Source: Mytilus californianus (taxonomy: Eukaryota). From it: a DNA stretch of 64,000 bases. Made by a program: the position numbers and the translations under genes. The stretch spans positions 32,054,001 to 32,118,000 of the forward strand of contig NW_026262593.1 of NCBI RefSeq assembly GCF_021869535.1. Direction: 5' to 3'. The notes beneath the pieces are model-generated. The model saw only the letters and a list, made by a program, of their open reading frames with translations, ran no database searches and had not been told where the DNA came from. Below, piece after piece: positions 3,191 through 45,061 of the stretch (positions within the stretch are counted from its first letter, which is position 1; each line of letters starts with the position of its first letter).

Positions 3191-6100
3191 CAGTCGATAC
3201 CAGCTACAGACAAACCTGCAGTTCGTTCTAAACCAAAACGAAATCCGTTACCTGATGCTGATGCTCACCCTGGTGCCGTTTCTATACAACCACAGATGAG
3301 TACAGAGGTAAAATAATTAAAACTCTAAAATGTATAGATGATATTTATAAGATTTTTGTACAATAAATTAAGTTGTTGAATCCTAATTTTGTTAAACAAT
3401 AACCTCTATGAGAATATAAGGTGTTTAAAAATGCTCAATTCCGGATGAATGATTATTTCCTACACCCAAATTGATTGTTTTTTGTTTTGTTTTTTTTTTT
3501 TTTGGGGGGGGGGGGGGTTGTTTAACGTCCATTTGGAAATATTTCAAATATATTCAAGACACAATACGAATTGATAATTATTGTTACACTTATACTTTTT
3601 TATTTCACTTTTTCCTCTTAATTTATTTTCACCACATCATATATGTTAATATTCATTAGCCGGCATTTTTGGAGACGGAAAATAATTTTAAATCTCTTTT
3701 ATCTTATTTATTTGTTGAAATTCTTTATTTCTATGTGAATCGACTTCAGAATTTAGATTGTGTTTTTTTCATGCTTGTCTCCATCGTCCAAATAATCGTT
3801 TACCGTATGTGTCTGAAACCTTGCAGTGTGTTTATGTATGTACAAACTCATCATAGAAACCAGGATTAGAATTTTATACGCCTGACGAGCGTTCCGTCAA
3901 CAAATGTCTCATCTAAATCTCAATCATTGAACTAAAGGCTATATGATAACCATGCAATACATAAAAGCACAAGCAAAAAACAAAACAGTGATCAACAATA
4001 AGGTATAAATAGAGGTGAACGAAACCGAAGGGATGATACAAAATCATAAGTCGAAGGACTATACTATGTCAAAAAAAAAAACGGCAACCCGATTAAACGA
4101 TAAAACGGCAAACAAATTTTAACAAAACACTACATAGATATCTAACGAGTCTCATCGTACTGCCAAAAATCGAATGTTGATGTAAACAAGCTTTAGAGTA
4201 CTGGACCAGCCAAATACAAAATCGTGTCGTCCGATACTCTAATAGCAATGCCTGTACTTTACAGAAATCTCATACGGCAACGTCTTAAACATAACAACGC
4301 TTTAAGCTCAGTTGGAAGAGCGGTCACTAACTGTACCCGGGGGCCAGAAATACACGACCTTGTGCAATGCCCAAAACAAACTTGTACATGATTCATTAGA
4401 AAAAGCACTTCAGTCCTGCTGCAAACTTTTAAATTAGCGAACTGATATTTATCAAAAAACAATCAATTACATTACATCAGAGACGTATATTACATAAGGG
4501 TCTTTTGAGAACTAAACTTCAACAAAAGGAGATGATTTCAATGTTCATATTGTGAATTTTCCGTTTCGCTGTAGCAAAGTTCCAACAGCTATGTATCTGA
4601 TTACATGTATGATTCATTAGAAACCTTGATTTCGATTGGCTTCCACGCTTCATACGAAATGTGCTTCGGTCAACGCTTTACAATCAGTAGCAGAGCGGTG
4701 ACTTACTGTACCCGGGGGTCCAGGTTTGATTCCAGGCTGGTATATGGGTAAAGTTTGGAAAGAAAATCACACTCTACTGTGACACATGCAGCACTGCATT
4801 TGCAAATAGTACTCCCAGTATAACGTTTGCAAGTTATTTTCGAAACGAAAAATCGTCGTGATAGAGTCTTGGAAATGATTTGGAAGATTTGCAAATTAGT
4901 ATTAAAACGCTCAGTAATCTATCGCAATCCGCCTGTTGAGATTGCTTGCAACTCAGGTAACAAGTCCGTTTGTGAAGGCGGCTGTTGGTTGATGGATGGA
5001 TAGTGAGTGTTTAATGTGCTATGCAGTTCCCCCTTCACATTTCATTTAAGATGCATTTAAAATTCTGAAACGAATTGTTCAAGTATTTTCACACTACTTT
5101 GATACCCTAAATGTTCCCTTCCAGCTTATAGACATGCTACCTAAAACTTTTAGCACCGTCTTTTTTTCATTAGTTTTAGCAAGTAAGTCTTCTACTTCTG
5201 ACTTGTGTATCTATATAATTTACATTTAGGAAATAATGCGTAAAGCGATAGGTGCAATTAATATGGTGAAACACGGATGTGATTCAGCTATGGTTGTAAA
5301 GGTGATATCAGATCTTCCAATCAATACCGAGGATGCTTTGAGTCGTATTGTGAATTTGGTTGTTGATACGGTAAGTTTTTTTTGTAACTAATGCTTTGAT
5401 AAAACGTAGATAACCTGCCGTTTTTTAACATTTTGATAATAAAATTGCAAACATAAGATTCGTTCTTTTTGTATAGAATAGACTTATTAGAAGTGAATAA
5501 CATATCGTTTGGAATTTGACCTCATAGACTTTATTCCCTTATTGGAAAATCAGTTGGCAATCAGATTATTTTTTATATCGCTACGGAAAAATGGTACAAT
5601 GTGATTGAATTATATTAGAATGTTGTTTTTTAGAAGCAGTAACATTGAGTAATAGTAGAAGTGTAGTTATATGGTTTCTGATATGGTTCCTGATAATACT
5701 CGACACTAATGTCACTTCTTCTCGATTATCAGTTTTTCTGCATAATTAGATTGTAAAAGATTAAGCGAGTCACAATCAAGTAATACAAATTTACATTTGT
5801 ATATAAATGAAAGACAAAATTTTATAGTCAATCAATCAGGTTGAAATTGTATAGATTTATCAATTGATATTTGTTCAGTCTATGTTTTTACTGTTCAGTA
5901 CTTGTTTATTACCCGAACAAAACAACAGCATACTGAACTGACTGAAAAGCGACTGAAAGTACGTGAGAAAGTCCATATCACGGCTTGTCTCATCATATGT
6001 GTTTGAACTGGCTGTGATCATTTTCATTTGAATTTGATTGCAAGCCAAAACTTCTGAACAGTACTGAATTTAGAAGGAGCTTATCGAAAAAATATCTTAA

Positions 6101-33240: not shown

Positions 33241-34407
33241 AAACACAATTATACATACTCACAGGGTATGGCAAGTTTCAAATTTAAAAAAAAGAGGTAT
33301 TTCCTAATGCAAAATTTCAACTTTAGCTGTTATATATATATTCATTGTGATTGTAAAAAGTTCGATTCCTTAAATAAAGGTGTAATCAGTCTTTTCATAC
33401 AGCGATATGTAATCCTATGAAAGTAGAGTGCCATAGTTATCTTTTCCGTTGAACCAAGTTAAAATACTGGGTGCAAAATGCAAAATGCCAATACAAATAA
33501 TTGCATGTTTCACTGAGTATACATTGCTGGTTTTGTTAAATATTCTTGATTCGTTTAAGGAATATAAAGGCAAATGACAAATATATGCCTACTTTCAATT
33601 CTTTGAAACGCGGATGCCAAAAACCTGCTTACTCTCCTGGATTTTAGTCAGGATTGTGAAGCTCAGTCGATGGATTTTAGGTTGTGTTTTGGACACTGTT
33701 GTTCGTCTTTTGACCATTTTTTGTAATTGCCATGATTTTTTCGGTTTCTGTTTTTTGACTTGTGAGTTTTGATTTCCCTTTTTGTATCTTTCGCCTCTTT
33801 TTGTGTTTTACCAAATAGGTATCATAAAAACCTATTGAATAATTTCAATAGAAAAATGTAGAATATTTTGTAATCTTATAGCCAGTCTGTATAACCGCAT
33901 ATAAACAATCGTGTTATTGTTTTGTCAATAAAATCCGAGAGGTGTGAAATAAATTATAGATCTGTAGAACAGAGGCCCTTTTTACGAAACATCTTACGAT
34001 AAAAACTGATCGGAAGTTATAATGAAATTTTTCTTATTTTTGAGTGGTTTTTTTAAAATTGATCGCGGAGCTTTATAATTGTAAATTCAAACACAGAATA
34101 GAAATTTACATTCAGTTTCTGGATCCAGGAATTTGCTGAACAAGACAAGTAGTCACGGTCGTTACATTTTAAGCTAATGTGAACATCTCTTGAATATGAC
34201 ATTAGAAATATTTGTTGGTAAACTTTATTTTACTCAGTTTAAATATATATATTCCAACGTCAAAGTATTTAGAACTAAGTGAGTAACTACACAGTCTAAA
34301 AGCATGGGCACGGTCACAGTGGAATTGATCTATTAACGAATGACCTGATTCAAAATATTGATATTTTAACATGAGCTTCAAGAGTGGCCCGTTGATTGTT
34401 AAACTAT

Positions 34408-34564
34408 TATACACCTATTGACTGGGTGTGAGGGTAATAGCTAGTTTGTTGTCCCTGAGATACTTACTATTGCTCGAGGCGAAGCCGAGGGCAATAGTTG
34501 GTATGCGAAGGGACAACAAACTTGCTATTACCCGCACAACCAGTCATTAGGTGTTTTATTATAC
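34408..34564. repeat. Crypton junction hairpin H1
   Basis: cacctattgactgggtgtgagggtaatag...gtttgttgtccct / agggacaacaaac...ctattacccgcacaaccagtcattaggtg around the core ctattgctcgaggcgaagccgagggcaatag. Confidence 0.9.
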
Positions 34565-36565
34565 TGAACAACACAACTTTCAAAGAAATCTTCAAACACC
34601 TTCTGACACATCTAAATTAGCAGAGCTATACCATACTGTTTGTACATTGTACAAGTGCATGCACAGTAGTATTGACAAATTTCACCAGTTTAGTTTCCTG
34701 ATGCATATGGTATCTTAAAAAAATAGTAAACAACATTGTATGGTTTAATGACTGTATTTTCAACAAAATATAACAAGAAACATATTGAATAATAACTGAC
34801 TCACTAAAGTTACTGACTGACTGAATTTACTCACTTCTCGAAATGAAAATGTATATTGGAATTGTTAATGTTTTGTATTGAAAATCCAGGCAATGGAAAA
34901 CAAGTTATTATTTACACCAACTGTTGAACTACATGAGGTGGGAACAATATTTTGAATGTTTGTCTGATTTGACTCATAGCTTGAAATGTCCTGTAATATT
35001 TGACCAAATTCAACATCATTAGAAAGTAAGTCAAAGCCATTATCACATATTGATGTTGTATCCTGAGTTTTAACTCTTTTTTCTGATAATTCACCATTCA
35101 AACTTGTTGCACTCTGAATAGTTTCACTCAGAATGTTTGACATTTCATATTTTTTAGTACTACTGAGACGCTTGCAATAGGACATACCTGCTATTCAGAT
35201 TTGTGGCCGCTAAGTCCCATAATGTGTCGAGTTTCAATACCCCCCTCATCCAAAACAGTTATGCATGTAGTGCGTATGCAATGATTTGTGTATCGTCGAG
35301 ACAAACCACACTCTTCACTTATTTTAGCCATTAGATTTCCAAGAGTATTTTTTCCAACTGGACTATTGTCATTGTAGTTTTAGATGCAAGCTTTGGCCGC
35401 TGCCAAAAATCTGTTCTATCTGGATGCAGCTTACTAAAATACTTGGTGAAAGATCTAACAGGGCAATTGGCACTCCCTGGAAAAAAGGATAGACACTTTT
35501 AATAGATAATATAAGTTTTACAGATAATTGTTTTTTGGTGTGATTTTTTTTATACATTGTTCCTGCAATTTTTGAGAGAGTTTTGAATTTACTTAATTTC
35601 AGTTAAAAGAAATAAACAACTTACACTTTCCCGTAATTTCCTATGTCACATTGCTGATGTTACAGTATTATTCACAGTAAAAACCAATGTTTGATGATGT
35701 CAGTTACGTTATGTTGATTGACCTCTGGTCAACTGGTGTAACTCATTGAAAAAGATACATGTACATGTCTTATATATAATGCTGTCTCATCAGTGAGTCA
35801 AGTGCAATGTACTTTAAATTTACAATGTATATTCACAGCTACAAATGTACTTTTTTGTAATGATTGTTTTTTTTCTTTTGGTGTAATGAATTTTAAGTTG
35901 AAACTTTTAGTTAAAATGTGCATTCATGTACGCACTTATAATGTATATATTACAATGTAAACACTGAACATGCAGAACTGTACATGTAGGGTATATTCTT
36001 TTATGTCCGGATGAAACATGATCATCATCAAGAAAAAATAATGCCATTTAAAAAACCAAGAGAGCAGTTTCATTATGGCTGGTACCTTAACTTGTTGAAC
36101 AGTAACTTCAAATGTGAAAGACTCATTATAGTATGGATTCAACATGAACTTCTTTATCATGGTTTAAGCAGCATGTATTTAATCTATTAATCTAAATATT
36201 ACCAATAAATAATTTACCTGGAATTTCATACACCTGCCATCTTTATCATCAACATCTGTAAAGTCGTCCCCTCTATGATTTTTGGTCTGCCGTACCACCT
36301 TAACTCTGACATACCGCAGTCCTTTTGCGTCTCTTTTCAACTCGAAATCATCCCTTTGAACATCCCGGATATTCTCTCTGCCTCTATTACAGAAGTAATA
36401 CAAATACTCAAAAAACACTCTCTTCTGTAATGCCTCAGGTGTGTTAAGGGAAAAATGTTCATGTTTATATAATTTCTGTAAGTCTTCAGGACAAATTGGC
36501 TCCTTGTGATTAACAGTGGCCTTTCCTTCTTTCTTCATCGCCACCAGTAGTCTTACGAAATTGGA

Positions 36566-36818
36566 TGCGCATGCGCTAGTTAATAGTCGACTTTTTGTGA
36601 CAGCTCAAAATTTTCAGCAAATTTACAGGACAAAGACCATATATCCTTTAATAATTTATCATAGTATTACTCAAAACATTGCTATACATTCATATAATAC
36701 AAAACATAAACTTTTCCTACCTGGAAATCGTATTTAGCAGAATTTAAACTACCAAACATTTTTGACATTTGGCGGGTAATTTTGTATCGTTTACATTAGA
36801 GACAACCCTCACTTCCGG
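36566..36818 (+). promoter_or_regulatory. Putative LINE internal promoter: NRF1-like TGCGCATGCGCT (36566-36577), E2F-like TTTGGCGG (36768-36775), ETS-like CACTTCCGG (36810-36818)
   Basis: Motif matches in the 5' UTR only; no functional evidence. Confidence 0.35.
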
Positions 36819-36848
36819 TGCAAAAAAAAACAACTGTGCCGACCTCAA

Positions 36849-37628
36849 ATGAGCAGCAAACTGAGAAAATACATAGCCCAACAACCACAAATACCAAAAG
36901 GATTCAGGTAAAGAACACCTATATTAATATCAGACAGTAAAGGTTATACAATTCGAAACGCCTGTGCACAAAACGAATTTCCCATCGAATCGTGGTGTAA
37001 AGCAGGTGCACGTACATCAGAACTCGTTGATATTATCCAAGAACGGATAGAAAAAGCAATAAAACGCCATAATCAGATCGTAATATATCTATGGTCAGGA
37101 ACCTGTGATTTGACCATCAAAAAAGGCAAATATATATATCTTAGAAACAGAGACAACAAGACCATCGAACAAATAGAAAAACAATACATCAGAGCCATTA
37201 AAATAGTAGAAAAATACCCAGCAGCAGAGATTAAACTTATTGACTGTCCAATATTGTCAATTGTGAGCTATAGCAAATACAAAGGCCACAACAATCCAGA
37301 AACATTTAAAACAGATGATTTTCAAATAACAAGGCAAATTAAACACCTAAATACCAAAATCATCGAAATAAATAACAGGCTGAACAAGAACACGATCAAC
37401 ATCAGCAAATACTTCTTTCGAGGCAGAAAAAGTAAAAAAGGCAGTACACGTAGGTCCGTCAAGATTACAATTAACAAGAGAGACGGAGTACATCCAGGAC
37501 AACTCCTAAGCCTAGTCATTGCCAAACAAATATTGATAGACACATACAGTGAGTGTTACCATATAACACAGGAATCTGAACTTGTTACACTTAGGGTGGA
37601 GGAAGAAGAACTCCTTACTCTTTTCTAA
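36849..37628 (+). pseudogene. LINE ORF1, SGNH/GDSL-type esterase, with one premature stop (TAA 36909-36911)
   Basis: ATG 36849 is in frame with the track ORF 37110-37628. Blocks ILISDSKG (I), AGART (II), SGTCD (III) and DGVHP (V) are present. Confidence 0.75.
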
Positions 37629-37815
37629 GAGCACCTACCAAACACAAGAGGAATGTACTGGAAGAGGGAGCAACAACCGTGGAATTTATAGTAAAGGGTT
37701 TAGGTGAGTTTATCTTATCAGTCTTTACTATAAATTGCATACACGGGCCAAGTGATGCTATAACTACCATATACCATAACATCAGCACTCTTTTTCAGCA
37801 AGATCCCAAGATTGT

Positions 37816-40800
37816 TTGGTTAACCTTACAGAAATTCGGACCACATATTCTGAGGTAACTATGATCATACTGTTTTACCTAATCATACTTGCCAAAATAA
37901 CCGAACAGGTACACACCAATAGTATCCTGACCAACAATGATACTTGCATGCCTGTACTCGTCAATGCAAAACAGAACACATCAACTGATATACTTACCTT
38001 TAATACTTACCACCTATTTAGGAAAAGATGTCTTGATAGAGTCGAAAGCACTAAACAGAGATCACTGTTAGCATACCTGGCAGTCATACTCATAAAAACA
38101 TCAAATGACATAAATCTCAACCCAGGACCTGAGTCAACTGTGTATCCATGTGGCACTTGTGACCATCCAGTAACATGGGACGATAGAGGAATAGTTTGTG
38201 ACACATGCAATCAATGGTACCATGTGTCATGCCAGTCGATGAACACTAAATCGTATAATGAATATGCAAATGACAGTGCACTTGCATGGGACTGTATCAC
38301 ATGTGGATGTCCAAACTATTCAACACTATGCTATTCATTAATACTTAGCACATCAAACCATTACAGCGTATTGTCTGACACCTCTCTTACCAGTCCAACG
38401 TCCTCAAAAAATATGAGACCCTTACATGCTTCAACACCGGATAAAAACAAGAACAGAAAACCATCAAAGAAATCTGAAACACCACTTAGATTATTAAATG
38501 TTAACTTCCGATCAATCAAAAGTAAACAAGGACAAGTACTAAATCTCATAGAAAGCACAAACCCAGATATCATCTTTGGACCCGAAACATGGGTAGACAA
38601 TAAGATCACTGACAGTCAAATATTCCCTCCTGGATATAACATCTTCCGGAAAGACAGAAACTGTAGCGGAGGGGGTGTATTAGTAGCTATTACAGATACA
38701 TATATAAACAGCCGTACCTGAACTACAAACTGACTGTGAAATTGTCTGGTGCAAACTTGAACTCATTGGACACAAAGCCATATACTTGAGCTCATACTAC
38801 AACCCTAAAAAACATCCAACGAGAATGGGTACTTAGAACTTGAGAAGAGCCTAACCAGAGCGAACAACATAAAAAATGCTTTAATCATCATAGCTGGTGA
38901 TTTCAACCTACCAGGCTGGGACTGGAAAACCAAATCACTGAAGCCCAATACACAACATACAAACATACACCATAAGTTCACTGACATCCTGGACGATCAT
39001 GGCTTACAACAAATGGTAGAGGAGCCAACAAGAGAATCAAACACACTGGATCTCATAATTACAAACTACCCAAACTGCTTCAACAGAGTCGAAACAATAC
39101 CTGGCATATCAGACCATGACATTGTCTTTGCAGAGTTAAATACCATACCATCTAAACAAACTCAAAAGCCAAGGAAAATATCCTTATATAAAAAAGCAAA
39201 GTGGGAAAACATCAGAGAAGATCTCAAATTGATAAATACTGAAATTACCAAGATGAACCATCATGAATGTAGTACACAAGAAATGTGGGACTATTTTCAA
39301 GGCAAACTTGAAAATACTATAAATGCCAACATACCGCAAAAAACAGCTAGAACAAAAGACGGTAACCCTTGGATTACGGCAGACATCAAACGCCTAATAC
39401 GGAAAAGAGACAAACATTACAAGAAAAAGAAAAAATCAGCTGATGCTAAGCATAACACCAAATATAAAGAACTGAAAAGACTGGTACAGAGAGAAATAAG
39501 ACGAGCATACTGGAAATATATAGAGGACATAATAACACCTGATCCCAAAGTAGACAAGACAAACTGCATGAAACGTTTCTGGACATTCATCAAGCACAAA
39601 AGATCAGACGGAAACCAAATACCACCATTAAGGAACAACGGACTACTCCATCCTGACTCAGTTGAAAAGGCTAACATACTAAATAAGCAGTTCCAATCAG
39701 CTTTTTCTGAAAAAAACCAACTTCACAGAAATAGAATTCAAAAACCGTTGTGACATGACCAACAACAACTACCCTACACTTCAAGACCTGAACATAACAG
39801 AAAACGGAATAGCAAAACTATTATCCAACCTAAACCCATTTAAAGCTGCGGGTCCAGACACCACTACATCAAGGGTGCTGAAGGAATTAGCCATAGACAA
39901 TGCACCAATCCTAACAACCATCTTCAGGCGATCCTATGAAACAGGTGATTTACCGGACATATGGAAAAAGGCTAACGTAAGCCCAATATTCAAGAAGGGA
40001 AACGGTTTGATGCAGTAAATTACCGCCCAGTCTCGCTTACCTGCATTTGCTGCAAAATCATGGAGCACATCGTAACAAGCCACATAATGACCCATGCTGA
40101 CAAACACAACATACTGTATCCACTACAACACGGATTCAGGAGAGGCCTGTCCTGCGAAACACAATTAATTGAGTTTATTAATGACATCACCATAAACATG
40201 GACGCAGGAAAACAAACTGACTGCCTTATAATGGATTTTTCTAAGGCCTTTGATAAAGTAAGTCATAGCCTACTTACCCACAAACTGGATCAATATGGCA
40301 TAAGAGGGAAAACCAATAGGTGGATCAAAAACTTCCTCGCCGACAGGAAACAAGTCGTAGTTGTAGAAGGGGAAAAATCTGATACAATCAACGTCGATTC
40401 GGGCGTCCCACAAGGATCAGTTCTTGGACCCAGTTTGTTCCTTTTCTACATAAATGACATGCCAGAGGGAATCCGATCAAGGGTAAGACTCTTTGCTGAT
40501 GATACAATCATATATCTCACAATATCATCGGACACAGACAGCGACCACCTTCAGGAAGATCTGAATAAATTGGCAATTTGGGAAAACAAATGGAAAATGG
40601 CATTTCATCCAGATAAATGTAATGTTCTTACCATAACAAGAAAACGTAAGCCTATTATAAAAGAATATGTACTGCATGGCCACACCCTCGAATCTCTAAA
40701 TTCTGCAAAGTACCTTGGCTGCACCATCAGCTCCGACTTAAAATGGAATGAACACATTAAAAACATATGTGTTAAAGCAAACAAGACCATAGGCTTCCTC

Positions 40801-41264
40801 AAACGTAACTTGAACATCAATAACAACACAATAAAAGAAACTGCATACAAGTCACTTGTAAGACCGACTCTAGAATATGCATGTACAGTCTGGGATCCTT
40901 ATCAACAAAACGACAAAAACCGACTGGAAATGGTCAGAGGAGAGCAGCCAGATATGTCACAAACAGATATCATTACACATCATCTGTTAGTGACATACTT
41001 AACAAACTAGAATGGAAAACCCTCGAAGACCGTAGGAGAACATCAAGGCTTACAATGATGTATAAACTTGCCAACGGGATGGTGAAAGTTGACACCAGTA
41101 ATACTCTCATTCCACCAGATAGGCTATCCAGAAACATCAACACAAATGGATATCAAGTACCATCTTGTAGGACCGAAGTGCGGAAGGAATCTTTTTACCC
41201 AAGGACGATACGAGACTGGAATGCCCTACCACATACTGCCACCAATACAGGTAGTCTTGAATGA
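37816..41264 (+). pseudogene. LINE ORF2 (PHD finger 38149-38304, AP endonuclease from ~38485, reverse transcriptase ~40000-40600), about five frameshifts
   Basis: C4-H-C3 PHD pattern; [24 protein letters not shown]; NYRPVSL, HGFRRGLSCETQL, DFSKAFDKV, GVPQGSVLGP, FADD. Frameshifts fall near 38710, 38810, 39715, 40000 and 40935. Confidence 0.92.
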
Positions 41265-42095
41265 TTCAAGACTTACCTGCATGAGATGAACTAGATCAAG
41301 CCAAGATGTTTTTAAACTCACTGTATATATGATGTATAGCACAAATTCAAATCAATTCAATATTTAATTTTTTTGTCTAAATTTTAAATGCGCATCCAAA
41401 AAGTGGCAAAATAATCAACTTATTGATGGTGGCCGCGTATTGGTAGAAGTAGAAGTAGAACCATCATGGCTTTAAACATATCATTTGCAGCATTATAATG
41501 TTCACTGTTAATGTCTTCTTTTCTTGTTTCGATGAAATGTTTTTGTAAACCAAATCTTAGAGTGATAAGTGATTTTTTAGCATATAAAGTACCATCCGTT
41601 TTTCTGACCTCCCCATAAAACTGTCGGAGTGTTTTAACAACGTCCTCTGTACAGGCCTGGTCCAAGTCTTGGATAGTTTTAAATGAACCGTCTTTTTCAA
41701 GTAAATAATCTCCGATTATCCGTTTTGCTACTCCATTTAAATTTTTTGCATTTTTCGAATCTCTGTCATAAAGTATTTTAGTAAGATCTTCAGGTTCTAA
41801 TGACGCAAATCTGCTTGTCTCTGCCATACTATGTTTATGTTTTGATCGTCTGATGTTGTCTTCCTGTTTTCGATATGTCAGTGTTTTACCTGACCATGCG
41901 AAAAGGTCAGAGAAACACGAATGATAAATGACGTCATTTTTGACCAATGAAAAGTAAGTTGGAAAAGCTCGGGAAATCTACTTACGAAACTATTCACCGG
42001 GTAAATAGTCTTTGAAACTATTAACTGGCAAATTGTCTCTAGAATGAAATAGCACAACTATTTCATTTATTTTATATAGAAAATAAACTCTTGAA

Positions 42096-43586
42096 GTATA
42101 ATAATATACACCTATTGACTGGGTATGAGGGTAATAGCAAGTTTGTTGTCCCTGAGATACCAACTATTGCTCGAGGCGAAGCCGAGGGCAATAGTTAGTT
42201 TCAAAGGGACAACAAACTTGCTATTACCCTCATAACCAGTCATTAAGTGTTTTATTATACCGAACAAAACAACTTTCTAAAAAGACTACATACACCACTT
42301 GAAAAAAAAATGATCACATAGACATGTACAACATGAACTATCAGGTTTTTTCCCCTGTGTGGTATTTGTCAATAATCTATTTACTGTAATCAAGACCAGG
42401 AATCCTTGTGTAAAAATTCCCGTGCATATGATAAACATTAGCTAAAATATTTTACCGTACACCAAAGCAATCCCAGATTATGAAGACGACGACAGACCAA
42501 TACCATACATTACATGTTTTAGTTCTTAAAAATATGTCGCGTAGATTTTCTTTTTAAATTGCTTCTGGTAAGTAATATATTAATTTGAAATTTGAAATTA
42601 CGACAGGTACATACAGATTATAACGTTTACGATATTTCAGAGTTTAACGTTGGCAAGCGCACAAATCCAAGCAGAATAGTCGATGACGTCATTGTTGTCC
42701 AATGAAAAATTAGTATGAAAAAGTACGGGAAATATGTTTATAAAACTATTGACCGGGGAAATAGTCTTTGAAACTATTGACTGGCAAATAGTCTGTGGAA
42801 TGAAATAGCACAAATATTTCATTCTTTTTTATATAGAAAAAACATACTGAGGTATAATAATATACACCTATTGACTGGGTATGAGGGTAATAGCAAGTTT
42901 GTTGTCCCTGAGATACCAACTATTGCTCGAGGCTTCGCCTCGAGCAATAGTTAGTTTCAAAGGGACAACAAACTTGCTATTACCCTCATAACCAGTCATT
43001 AAGTGTTTTATTATACCGAACAAAACAACTTTCTCAAAAGACTACATACACCACTTGAAAAAAAAATGATTACAAGATGAACTATTAGGTTTTTTTTCCC
43101 TGTGTGGTATTTGTCAATAATCTATATACTGTAATCAAGACCAGGATTCCTTGTGTAAAAATTGCCGTGCAAATGATAAACATTAGCTAAAATATTTTAC
43201 CGTACACCAAAGCAATCCCAGATTATGAAGACGACAACAGACCAACACAATACATTACATGTTTTAGTTCTTAAAATATGTCGCGTAGATTTTCTTTATC
43301 AATTGCTTCTGGTAAGTAATATATTAATTTGAAATTACGACAGATACATACAGATTATAACGTTTACGATATTTCAGAGTTTAACGTTGCCAAGCGCACA
43401 AATCCAAGCAGAATAGTCGATGACGTCATTGTTGTCCAATGAAAAATTAGTATGAAAAAGTACGGGAAATATGTTTATAAAACTATTGACCGGGGTAATA
43501 GTCTTTGAAACTATTGACTGGCAAATAGTCTGTGGAATGAAATAGCACAAATATTTCATTCTTTTTTATATAGAAAAAACATACTG
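42096..43586. mobile_element. Two tandem non-autonomous Crypton units (42096-42851, 42852-43586), period ~756 bp, each starting with the hairpin (H2 42096-42260, H3 42852-43016)
   Basis: Near-identical direct copies; ORFs 42637-42822 and 43374-43559 are nearly the same. Both units share the left subterminus (gtgttttattatac.gaacaa.acaactttc) and the right subterminus (TGACGTCA...gaaactatt.actggcaaat...tatatagaaa) with the autonomous element. Confidence 0.85.
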
Positions 43587-43901
43587 CAATTTTTACACAA
43601 GGATTCCTGGTCTTGATTACAGTATATAGATTATTGACAAATACCACACAGGGAAAAAAAACCTAATAGTTCATCTTGTACATGTCTATGTAATCATTTT
43701 TTTTCAAGTGGTGTATGTAGTCTTTTGAGAAAGTTGTTTTGTTCGGTATAAAAAAACACTTAATGACTGGTTATGAGGGTAATAGCAAGTTTGTTGTCCC
43801 TTTGAAACTAACTATTGCTCGAGGCAAAGCCTCGAGCAATAGTTGGTATCTCAGGGACAACAAACTTGCTATTACCCTCATACCCAGTCAATAGGTGTAT
43901 A
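43587..43901 (-). mobile_element. Inverted partial Crypton unit including hairpin H4
   Basis: Reverse complement of about 42861-43164; it retains a short segment (catagacatgta) deleted in unit B. Confidence 0.85.
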
Positions 43902-45061
43902 CTATTTATGAATTTTGCTTTCCAAAATGTTTGATCTCGATTGCAAGATAGAAGGATTAAGATTACTTCATCTGTATCATAGATGTAAATCATAGTCAGA
44001 AGCTTGACTTTGAATACTAGTATATAAGATATGTTTCATAGTTTGTAATCGTATGCCATATTACAGTATTAAAAAAACACTGAAATACTTGGTTTCGAAT
44101 GAACGCGTAAGGACGTCATTTCTGGCTAGTATCAAGGACCAGCATAGTCCAGTCTCAAATAGGTTTACCATACATGTTCTTCTTGTAAAGTCGTCAACAG
44201 CATTCATTCACCGTTTTTAAACATTGTATTTCAGCATAATGTGGTGGGTCTCGATATTATTGAGACCTCACCCTGAAACAATTCCTACATTGTTAAATAA
44301 TATATCATAACATTAAGTGTACTAGTCACAATGTGGTCTGCATGACTATACATAAAAGTTAAGTAATGATTGTTAAGTCAGCAGGTTTGGATTTAAAAAG
44401 ACGAAATTTAAAAGCATTGAAAAAACACCCATCAAAACCTTAGCCAAACAAGGCCGGATAGAAGAAAATTATAGTCTTTCGATTTATTTTGAATGTTTTA
44501 TGAACAGCAATTAAACATATAATCCCTTTGTTACTTGTACGGTACGTTGCTGTTGTTCGTGGACAAAACATAAGAACATCCCTTCCAAAAATTTATTCAG
44601 AAATGTTTTACGTGGAATCACAAGCATATTTTATATTTTGCACAAAATGGCAAAGTTTTCTTTTCAAAAAGGAGGAGTTAGGGTAACAGTCATTCATTTG
44701 AACTTTGAAGTTGCAATACTTCTAACTTTTCTTCATTTTCTTTGAATGACTAGTACATACTGCTACTAGAGGGGTGTTTAACGACCTTGACTACCCACGA
44801 GGGTCTCGCACGGTCGGCGAATAGTACATTGATATCTTTGATCAATAAATAGTTGCTTAAGCATCATTTCATTCATTTGCAGCGTTATAAACATTTCAAA
44901 ATTTACCCCCTTTGACAACAATAGCCTTATAGATTTCGTTAAATTGTCTATATGCCATTTTGTTTTTGTTTTTTGAAATAGTTATTTGTTTTTATAGTGA
45001 TCAAGATTTATTACACAATGTTGACTACTGTACCCTAATTTTTGACAATTTTACCTATTAT

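What the first reader, a model, noticed from the sequence alone, without database searches (positions are those of the whole stretch)
34408..43901. Tyrosine-recombinase element heading a hairpin-delimited tandem cassette array (integron-like architecture in an animal)
The layout is H1-[recombinase body]-H2-[~590-bp unit]-H3-[~570-bp unit]-[inverted partial unit]-H4. Each H is a ~160-bp imperfect palindrome. Autonomous and non-autonomous bodies share both subtermini, and neighbours share a single hairpin. Cryptons are known to encode tyrosine recombinases and are thought to move via circles. Inference: the hairpin is the recombination site, and body-plus-hairpin circles integrate repeatedly into an existing hairpin, building an array analogous to attC-bounded integron cassettes. 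Unit B stops 2 nt short of where the next hairpin would begin, which marks the hairpin edge as a breakpoint.
Basis: partly seen in the sequence, partly recalled or inferred. Interest (0 to 1): 0.8.

Follow-up and report, generated by a model that had tools for sequence, protein, structure and literature searches.

The report
Clustered mussel Cryptons with palindromic ends
Four copies of a mussel jumping gene family, each carrying one long mirror-image stretch of DNA at one end, landed next to each other one at a time; this shows where the family cuts and joins DNA, but it is not an integron-like gene-cassette system.

Summary

The locus holds four members of one Crypton (tyrosine-recombinase) DNA transposon family:
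- an autonomous copy, whose gene is on the minus strand and is broken by a 4.9-kb LINE and by frameshifts;
- two non-coding derivatives, head-to-tail;
- a fourth copy, inverted and truncated.

Each element carries one palindrome, at the end downstream of the gene. Ends are flank-AATAK|TATACACC... and ...GGTAT|AATAA-flank, the short terminal direct repeat typical of Cryptons.

In the whole genome about 95% of copies are solo (about 208 heads, about 10 head-to-tail junctions). Neighbours in arrays are not each other's closest relatives: unit A is 99.7% identical to a copy on another chromosome and 97% to unit B. Arrays therefore arise by independent integrations next to resident ends, not by duplication.

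The palindrome is conserved in diverged relatives from other assemblies and is kept by compensatory changes in 17 of 65 pairs.

The integron analogy fails on platform, cassette content, sequence variability and array frequency. Whether the palindrome works as a folded site is untested.

Earlier agents of this scan found the palindrome-ended Crypton on other DNA of this genome. The array analysis is what is new here.

The parts
34403..34407 (+). Left junction core of the autonomous unit (ACTAT), derived from the target
   Evidence: Read from the sequence. It occupies the same position as the AATAT/AATAG cores left of other copies.
34408..34559 (.). Palindrome H1, the head of the autonomous unit
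   Evidence: -56.1 kcal/mol, z -14.7.
34408..42099 (+). Autonomous Crypton unit (head to tail on the + strand, gene on the - strand), including a foreign LINE
   Evidence: Collinear with the LINE-free 2.7-kb solo copies L026 and L027.
34865..35476 (-). Recombinase exon 2 (catalytic H-x-x-R, GH and Y region plus C-terminal tail). It is broken here by frameshifts and a TAG stop.
   Evidence: Translations. Pfam Phage_integrase hit. Alignment with relatives and a weak match to XerA over the catalytic region.
35477..36217 (-). Inferred intron (GT...AG)
   Evidence: Donor CCAG|GTAAAT and acceptor TTTTTTCCAG|GG are read. Joining them gives ...PGSANCPV..., which matches the contiguous relative P0033. 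Inference only; no RNA support.
36218..36545 (-). Recombinase exon 1, distal part (contains the RGRE arginine motif)
   Evidence: ORF 36179..36544. It is contiguous with 41460.. in L026 and L027.
36546..41459 (+). Nested non-LTR retrotransposon (PHD finger, reverse transcriptase, (GTAGAA)n tail), flanked by a 3-bp duplication ACC. Not part of the Crypton.
   Evidence: Pfam RVT_1 at 3.9e-29 and PHD. Junctions compared with the uninterrupted L026. Contigs of other copies run from 41460 straight into 36544 (loose ends).
41460..41827 (-). Recombinase exon 1, proximal part, from the first ATG (QRICH1-like N-terminal domain)
   Evidence: ORF 41420..41947. Pfam QRICH1 hits.
41948..42099 (+). Tail subterminus of the autonomous unit. 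It lies upstream of the gene, carries the TGACGTCA and CCAAT motifs, and is shared with the non-autonomous units.
   Evidence: D5, D7.
42100..42104 (+). Junction core AATAA between the autonomous tail and unit A
42105..42855 (+). Non-autonomous unit A (palindrome H2 at 42105-42253, plus body). It has no ORF of 80 aa or more.
   Evidence: It is 99.7% identical to the solo copy L004 on another contig.
42856..42860 (+). Junction core AATAA between unit A and unit B
   Evidence: exact match to the junction pattern.
42861..43586 (+). Non-autonomous unit B (palindrome H3 at 42861-43009, plus body). Its tail lacks the last 8 nt (AGGTATAA...).
   Evidence: It is 97.0% identical to unit A.
43587..43901 (-). 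Inverted, truncated unit C (palindrome H4 plus about 165 bp of body), joined tail-side to unit B
   Evidence: I1 and I4, 98-99% complementary to the head of unit B. Junction with 1-nt microhomology.
43902..43906 (-). Left junction core of unit C (AATAG on the - strand), derived from the target
   Evidence: Read. It shows that unit C is a separate insertion.

Best explanation
The locus is a cluster of four independently inserted members of one Crypton DNA transposon family in a mussel genome. They are one autonomous copy, now dead (LINE insertion, frameshifts, stop), and three non-coding deletion derivatives.

Each element is asymmetric. Its head is a conserved ~150-bp imperfect palindrome that lies downstream of the recombinase gene. 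Its tail ends in GGTAT-AATAA.

Inferred mechanism:
1. The tyrosine recombinase excises the element as a circle whose junction reads GGTAT-AATAA-TATACACC.
2. It recombines the AATAA core with a similar AATAK target. That leaves target-derived AATAK on the left and element-derived AATAA on the right.
3. A resident copy's end already offers one recombinase half-site plus the core, and a tandem junction offers the whole site. Resident ends are therefore hit far more often than the roughly 3x10^7 other AATAK sites.
4. This gives occasional head-to-tail arrays and tail-to-tail pairs.
5. A tail-to-tail pair forms a kilobase-size palindrome and then suffers a central deletion, as between units B and C here.

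The palindrome is under constraint to stay self-complementary. It is most likely an accessory or architectural part of the recombination site.
For: Shown here:
- Recombinase identity: QRICH1, DUF3504 and Phage_integrase hits, with RGRE, H-x-x-R, GH and Y conserved.
- One palindrome per element: 15 of 20 sampled loci and 2 close solo autonomous copies.
- Ends...GGTAT|AATAA on the right in 20 of 22 copies. Just under half of the 24 left junctions tabulated read AATAG or AATAT, and nearly all end in A followed by T or G.
- A copy in a satellite (L015): the empty monomer has AATAG once, and the filled site has AATAG on the left and AATAA on the right.
- Census: 208 heads, 205 tails, 7+3 head-to-tail junctions, 1 intact tail-to-tail pair, 0 head-to-head.
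- About 20 AATA[TGA] sites per kb, so resident ends are enriched on the order of 1000-fold.
- Array neighbours are not nearest relatives: A-L004 99.7% against A-B 97.0%; L013a-L014 98.7% against L013a-L013b 89.6%; L006a-b 86%.
- The youngest unit (A) sits between older ones.
- The palindrome is homologous in relatives with 60-70% protein identity from other assemblies.
- Covariation: 94% of cells paired; 17 of 65 pairs changed on both sides, against 9.1 +/- 1.9 in shuffles and at most 2 in the slid controls.
- The tail GGTATAATAA is the inverted copy of TTATTATACC at the inner base of the palindrome.

From the literature:
- Crypton model of a short donor motif recombining with a near-identical target, and recombinase-mediated rearrangements (PMC9977147).
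- Short terminal direct repeats as the only described Crypton end feature (PMC3212892, PMC8969392).
Against: - No circle, excision footprint or polymorphic empty site was observed here.
- RNA reads show essentially no expression at this locus.
- The array was not checked with long reads.
- The preference for resident ends is inferred from counts in a single assembly.
- Three tandem junctions have an 8-nt spacer (AATAATAA or AATAATAT) instead of 5 nt, which the simple model explains only by slippage of the crossover in the AAT repeat.
- The tails truncated in two independent inverted pairs (this window and L016) end within 2 nt of each other, which random central deletion does not predict.
Confidence: 0.75

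Rival explanations
1. Integron-like system. The palindrome folds as single-stranded or cruciform DNA and is itself the recombination site (like attC, or the CTX phage attP hairpin). Arrays headed by the recombinase element are then the functional state.
For: - A tyrosine recombinase is present, and the crossover lies at the base of an imperfect palindrome.
- The asymmetries (an internal bubble and a G/A mismatch) are present in nearly all of the 29 copies aligned.
- Self-complementarity is kept by compensatory changes.
- In a circle or tandem junction the palindrome extends about 10 bp further, through the tail.
- The array is heteromeric and includes an autonomous copy.
Against: - About 95% of copies are solo.
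- The units carry no ORF and are deletion derivatives of the autonomous element.
- There is no separate attI or promoter platform.
- The palindrome sequence is about 90% conserved across families whose proteins are 60-70% identical, the opposite of attC.
- Integration into plain AATAK targets needs no second hairpin.
- No strand bias in wobble-type mismatches was found.
- Folding in vivo is untested.
Confidence: 0.12
2. Local tandem duplication, unequal crossing-over or replication slippage at the palindromes produced the array from one resident copy.
For: Palindromes and direct repeats promote such events. Unit B and the inverted unit C are 98-99% alike.
Against: - Unit A's closest relative is on another contig (99.7%), while A against B is 97%.
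- An autonomous unit followed by non-autonomous units cannot arise by duplicating one unit.
- Other arrays (L013, L006) also pair units only 86-90% alike.
- Unit C has its own target-derived core.
Confidence: 0.05
3. The array is an assembly artefact in a repeat-rich region.
For: The family is high-copy, and short-read contigs do not span the locus.
Against: - The units differ from each other by 3-8% and have distinct junctions.
- The same precise tail-AATAA-head junction recurs at about 8 other loci.
- The flank-to-H4 junction is held in contigs from three other studies (records 8, 16 and 24).
Confidence: 0.04
4. The short units are moved by a different machinery (Helitron-type rolling circle, or a DDE transposase acting on a fold-back element) and only happen to share ends with the Crypton.
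For: A single terminal hairpin and tandem arrays are reminiscent of Helitron or Helentron derivatives in bivalves (own knowledge; not tested).
Against: - The units share both subtermini and the exact termini with the recombinase-encoding copies.
- There is no target-site duplication and there are no terminal inverted repeats at the two ends.
- The ends lack the Helitron TC...CTRR termini and A/T insertion site described in PMC8969392.
- No Rep/helicase ORF is present in the element.
Confidence: 0.03

Closest known systems
Crypton DNA transposons, animal CryptonA / DUF3504-related group (Goodwin 2003; Kojima & Jurka 2011, PMC3212892; active CryptonF in Chlamydomonas, PMC9977147)
   Same: - A single intron-containing gene for a tyrosine recombinase with the catalytic residues.
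- No reverse transcriptase of its own.
- A short direct repeat at both termini that is similar in all copies.
- Insertion consistent with recombination between an element motif and a near-identical target.
- Abundant non-autonomous derivatives, as in medaka.
- Rearrangements at element ends.
   Different: - The papers read here describe no terminal repeats in animal Cryptons (PMC3212892).
- This lineage has a conserved ~150-bp palindrome at one end, plus a 10-bp inverted motif linking the tail to the inner base of the palindrome.
- It inserts preferentially next to resident copies.
Mobile integrons (IntI, attI, attC cassette arrays)
   Same: - A tyrosine recombinase.
- A circular unit with a single imperfect palindromic site.
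- A crossover at the base of the stem.
- Head-to-tail arrays made by successive integrations.
   Different: - No fixed platform or promoter.
- The units are non-coding copies of the transposon itself.
- The sequence of the palindrome, not only its structure, is conserved.
- Arrays are rare.
- Integration goes mostly into ordinary AATAK sites.
- The recombinase is of the eukaryotic Crypton type.
CTX phage integration by XerCD (folded ~150-nt attP hairpin of the single-stranded genome)
   Same: A hairpin of comparable size placed at the recombination site of a circular element that uses a tyrosine recombinase.
   Different: There is no evidence here for a single-stranded stage. The comparison rests on my own knowledge and was not tested.
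DIRS/Ngaro/VIPER tyrosine-recombinase retrotransposons
   Same: A tyrosine recombinase, a presumed circular intermediate, and structured terminal repeats.
   Different: Those elements encode reverse transcriptase and have inverted terminal or split direct repeats (PMC13465315). Here the only reverse transcriptase belongs to a separate LINE with its own target duplication.

Membership tests
Crypton | Encodes a tyrosine recombinase with the R-H-R-Y catalytic set as its only transposition protein | tested here: met
   The family's copies and relatives show RGRE, NHCIR, GH and a Y in ...SY.KRL, and they align to XerA across H-x-x-R/H/Y. The Pfam Phage_integrase and DUF3504 hits fall below the gathering cut-offs; QRICH1 reaches 32.2 against a cut-off of 30.8. 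The window copy itself is broken.
Crypton | Short (4-6 bp) direct repeat at both termini, similar across copies | tested here: met
   AATAA on the right and AATAK on the left in 22 copies. The satellite target in L015 shows a single AATAG before insertion.
Crypton | No reverse transcriptase, no long terminal direct repeats, no DDE-type terminal inverted repeats with a target duplication | tested here: met
   The LINE-free copies L026 and L027 contain only the recombinase gene. The RT in the window is a nested LINE with its own duplication.
Crypton | No terminal repeat structure (as described for animal Cryptons in PMC3212892) | tested here: not met
   A conserved ~150-bp subterminal palindrome is present. 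This is a descriptive rather than a defining trait, so the element is filed as a variant.
Crypton | Movement through an excised circle | not testable with these tools
   Only contigs and one RNA run were served. No circle junction can be told apart from a tandem junction.
Integron | Stationary platform: integrase gene with adjacent attI and a cassette promoter | tested here: not met
   The recombinase-bearing unit has the same head and tail as the short units and also occurs solo elsewhere.
Integron | Cassettes consisting of a promoterless gene plus attC | tested here: not met
   There is no ORF of 80 aa or more in 42100-43900. The units are internal-deletion derivatives of the autonomous element.
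Integron | attC conserved in structure but variable in sequence, recombined as a folded single strand | tested here: inconclusive
   The structure is kept by compensatory changes, but the sequence is also highly conserved. Folding and strand choice are untestable here.
Integron | Arrays are the normal state of the cassettes | tested here: not met
   About 10 tandem junctions against about 208 heads.
Helitron/Helentron | Rep/helicase protein, with the TC...CTRR ends and A/T insertion site described in PMC8969392 | tested here: not met
   No such ORF is present, and the ends are TATACACC... and ...GGTATAATAA.

The most novel reading that the evidence does not exclude
The conserved palindrome would be the recombinase's folded substrate (a cruciform or a single-stranded hairpin, as with integron attC or CTX phage attP). 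The complete, extended palindrome with both half-sites exists only in the circle and at tandem junctions. Arrays would then be self-extending landing pads that also shed circles. That would be a eukaryotic counterpart of structure-specific tyrosine recombination.
Probability: 0.2. Interest if true: 0.8.

Novelty: new variant of a known kind. Interest (0 to 1): 0.5.

Why it matters
How Cryptons move has never been studied biochemically, and their ends are usually described as featureless. This family offers three things:
- base-precise ends, a defined 5-bp core and a long, evolutionarily constrained palindrome beside it;
- hundreds of non-autonomous copies;
- natural tandem junctions that look like the predicted circle junction.

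These are concrete substrates for testing the recombination mechanism. They would also show whether a eukaryotic tyrosine recombinase reads DNA structure. For genome annotation, the result explains a class of hairpin-containing repeats and local inverted or tandem clusters in mussel genomes.

Tried and rejected
- **Covariation within the family** (29 palindromes). The copies are too similar; one compensatory pair, a single event. It became informative only after adding diverged relatives.
- **Strand test by wobble mismatches.** G-T against A-C mismatches were 13 against 10, so no strand signal and no case for an RNA hairpin on one strand.
- **Reads**. Only Logan short-read contigs and one RNA run were available. 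Nothing spans the array, and the RNA run gave 9 partial reads, so neither assembly support nor expression could be shown.
- **B/C junction as a site-specific event.** Rejected: neither breakpoint has an AATA-like motif, and there is only 1 nt of microhomology.
- **Hairpin at both ends of solo copies.** Rejected.
- **Fetching more genome loci.** Not examined: other Crypton families, the three-unit array at C2:74489513-74491816, the junction pair at C154:97943173/97948539, and the intact tail-to-tail pair at C1:6598678.
- **Joined spliced protein.** The spliced protein was searched exon by exon only. The joined model was not built or searched.
- **Literature.** Searches found no description of palindromic Crypton ends. 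Repbase could not be consulted.


Full report
**1. Observation**

Repeat finding and folding confirm four ~150-bp imperfect palindromes. H1 lies at 34408-34559, H2 at 42105-42253, H3 at 42861-43009 and H4 at 43753-43901 (inverted). Each has 70-nt arms around a 3-nt tip. Predicted single-strand energies are -56 to -66 kcal/mol, with z-scores of -15 to -21 against shuffles. Between them lie a 7.5-kb body, two ~590-bp units 97% alike, and an inverted fragment 98-99% complementary to the head of the second unit.

**2. What the body is**

The minus strand carries a tyrosine-recombinase gene.
- Exon 1 runs from the first ATG at 41827 and has a QRICH1-like N-terminal domain.
- Exon 2 (35476..34865) carries the NHCIR, GH and SY motifs. 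It hits Pfam Phage_integrase and DUF3504 below the gathering cut-offs.
- Relatives align to the archaeal recombinase XerA across the H-x-x-R, H and Y positions.

Here the gene is dead. A + strand LINE (36546-41459; PHD finger, reverse transcriptase at 3.9e-29, (GTAGAA)n tail, 3-bp duplication ACC) splits exon 1, and exon 2 has frameshifts and a TAG stop. Two 2.7-kb LINE-free copies elsewhere in the genome (L026, L027) show the uninterrupted structure. The intron (36217..35477) is inferred from GT/AG sites and from a contiguous relative, P0033. I did not build or search the joined protein.

**3. The unit of the family**

The window is part of a 1.65-Gb genome. Earlier agents' notes name it Mytilus californianus, and my best named protein hit is Mytilus coruscus at 93% identity.

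Of 20 loci sampled around palindrome matches, 15 hold exactly one palindrome followed by one ~590-bp body and then unrelated DNA. The two close solo autonomous copies likewise have a single palindrome, at the end downstream of the gene. So every element carries one palindrome at its head. 'Neighbours sharing a hairpin' is simply head-to-tail packing.

**4. Ends and target**

Aligning 22 copies gives flank-(A)ATA[T/G]|TATACACC... at the head and ...ACTGAGGTAT|AATAA-flank at the tail. The right-hand AATAA is nearly invariant. The left pentamer varies: just under half of the 24 left junctions tabulated read AATAG or AATAT, and nearly all end in A followed by T or G.

One copy (L015) sits in a satellite whose empty monomers read ...gcgcAATAGcaagaaat.... 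The filled site has AATAG on the left and AATAA on the right, with nothing else duplicated.

This is the Crypton pattern. A short element motif recombines with a near-identical target, as proposed by Goodwin and observed for active Chlamydomonas Cryptons (PMC9977147). It leaves a 'TSD-like' repeat that is similar in all copies (PMC8969392, PMC3212892).

The tandem junctions in the window read GGTAT-AATAA-TATACACC, which is the predicted circle junction.

**5. How common arrays are, and how they arise**

Exhaustive pattern searches of the genome gave these counts:

| Feature | Count |
|---|---|
| Heads | 208 |
| Tails | 205 |
| Head-to-tail junctions, 5-nt core | 7 (2 in this window) |
| Head-to-tail junctions, 8-nt spacer | 3 |
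| Intact tail-to-tail pairs | 1 |
| Head-to-head pairs | 0 |

About 5% of heads therefore follow a tail. AATA[TGA] occurs about 20 times per kb, which extrapolates to about 3x10^7 sites. Landing on one of a few hundred resident ends is therefore enriched on the order of a thousand-fold.

Array neighbours are not sisters:
- Unit A is 99.7% identical to a solo copy on another contig (L004) but only 97.0% to unit B.
- In L013 one unit is 98.7% identical to a copy elsewhere and 89.6% to its neighbour.
- In L006 the two units are 86% alike.

A heteromer of an autonomous and two non-autonomous units cannot come from duplication either. Arrays are therefore built by independent integrations at resident ends. 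The youngest unit here (A) lies between older ones. It must therefore have entered at a resident end or at a pre-existing junction; the data cannot tell which.

**6. The inverted fragment**

H4 has its own target-derived core (AATAG, 43902-43906), so it heads a fourth, inverted insertion placed tail-to-tail with unit B. About 450 bp spanning the two tails is missing, and the joint shows 1 nt of microhomology and no AATA motif. The same pattern, an inverted pair with a central deletion, occurs in L016 and L020. One intact pair exists at C1:6598678.

A tail-to-tail pair is a ~1.5-kb palindrome, and central deletion of such structures is expected from general knowledge. One point remains unexplained: the two truncated tails (this window and L016) end within 2 nt of each other, right at the GGTATAATAA motif.

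**7. The palindrome is a conserved, constrained part of the element**

Protein relatives at 60-70% identity sit on contigs of other assemblies and metagenomes (L032, L034, L035, L037, L043). They carry a homologous 140-155-bp palindrome 2.2-2.9 kb downstream of the gene start, with the same TATACAC outer edge. L038 has an internally deleted version. The tail terminus TTATTATAC is conserved as well.

Across seven diverged palindromes:
- 94% of cells pair.
- 17 of 65 pairs changed on both sides, against 9.1 +/- 1.9 in shuffles and at most 2 in the slid controls.

Within the family the asymmetries (an 8-nt bubble and a G/A mismatch) are present in nearly all of the 29 copies aligned. That argues against regeneration of one arm from the other at each cycle. 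H3 and H4 do share a derived, perfectly complementary centre, so occasional arm-to-arm correction occurs.

The tail motif GGTATAATAA is the inverted copy of TTATTATACC at the inner base of the palindrome. In a circle or tandem junction the self-complementary region therefore extends by about 10 bp and brackets the core. Whether the DNA acts folded, or as a dyad of protein-binding sites, cannot be decided here. Wobble-type mismatches show no strand bias.

**8. Comparison and verdict**

This is a Crypton of the animal DUF3504-related kind. The published descriptions I could read mention only short direct repeats, and state 'no terminal repeats in animal Cryptons' (PMC3212892; also PMC8969392, PMC13465315). 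The palindromic end therefore looks like an undescribed variant. I could not consult Repbase.

The scan's earlier agents reached the same view on other DNA of this genome (s1-279511, s1-342880; s1-320706 is the locus I fetched as L027). What this finding adds is the array analysis.

As a system the integron analogy fails:
- There is no platform.
- The units are non-coding copies of the transposon.
- The palindrome sequence is conserved.
- Arrays are the exception.

The narrower idea survives as a minority reading: a tyrosine recombinase acting at the base of a structured site, with repeated integration beside an existing site.

**9. Limits**

The array was not verified with long reads. Only short-read contigs were served; they cover the H4-flank junction in three studies but span nothing else. 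No RNA support was seen.

Noticed in passing
window 36546-41459 (+): A full-length-looking LINE sits inside the Crypton gene. It has a 172-aa ORF1-like frame, an ORF2 with a PHD finger ahead of the reverse transcriptase, a (GTAGAA)3 3' tail and a 3-bp target duplication ACC. An earlier first-reader note (s1-322436) concerns a 2A-like motif in it.
   Followed up: partly
window 42930-42945 and 43822-43837 (centres of H3 and H4); also L020:4205-4220: These palindromes share a derived centre, CTCGAGGC-nnn-GCCTCGAG, that is perfectly complementary. All other copies have the imperfect GCCGAGGG. This looks like arm-to-arm correction and marks a subfamily.
   Followed up: partly
window 41919-41966, 42674-42721, 43411-43458: A TGACGTCA (CRE-like) motif followed by CCAAT lies just upstream of the recombinase start. 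It is retained in the non-coding units, so it may be the element's promoter.
   Followed up: no
L016:3425-3435 and window 43580-43590: Two independent inverted pairs have the truncated tail ending within 2 nt of each other (...CATACTGAG| and ...CATACTG|), at the start of the terminal GGTATAATAA motif. This is unexplained.
   Followed up: partly
L029:6562-6870 and L030:2821-2962 (genome C132:5682xxxx and C99:10117xxxx): A roughly 85%-identical autonomous subfamily has an internally deleted palindrome: the outer arm and the last ~24 nt are kept, and 60-160 bp of other sequence takes the place of the rest. Its tail terminus is intact.
   Followed up: no
G000 genome-wide: The genome holds a large, diverse set of Crypton-type recombinase loci: 796 first-look candidates and 123 matches at E<=1e-20. 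They include multi-copy families with open frames of 398-474 aa.
   Followed up: no
window 42076-42269 and 42755-42851 (depth table): The summed contig word depth of the palindrome and tail is several times that of the unit body, which itself is far above the single-copy flank. This suggests other non-autonomous families with the same ends but different bodies.
   Followed up: no
L015:3930-4000 and 4748-4810 (genome C88:8735xxxx): The element is inserted in a ~36-bp satellite (aatagcaagaaat.ttcaattgcaca.tattgcgc). This serves as a built-in empty-site control.
   Followed up: partly
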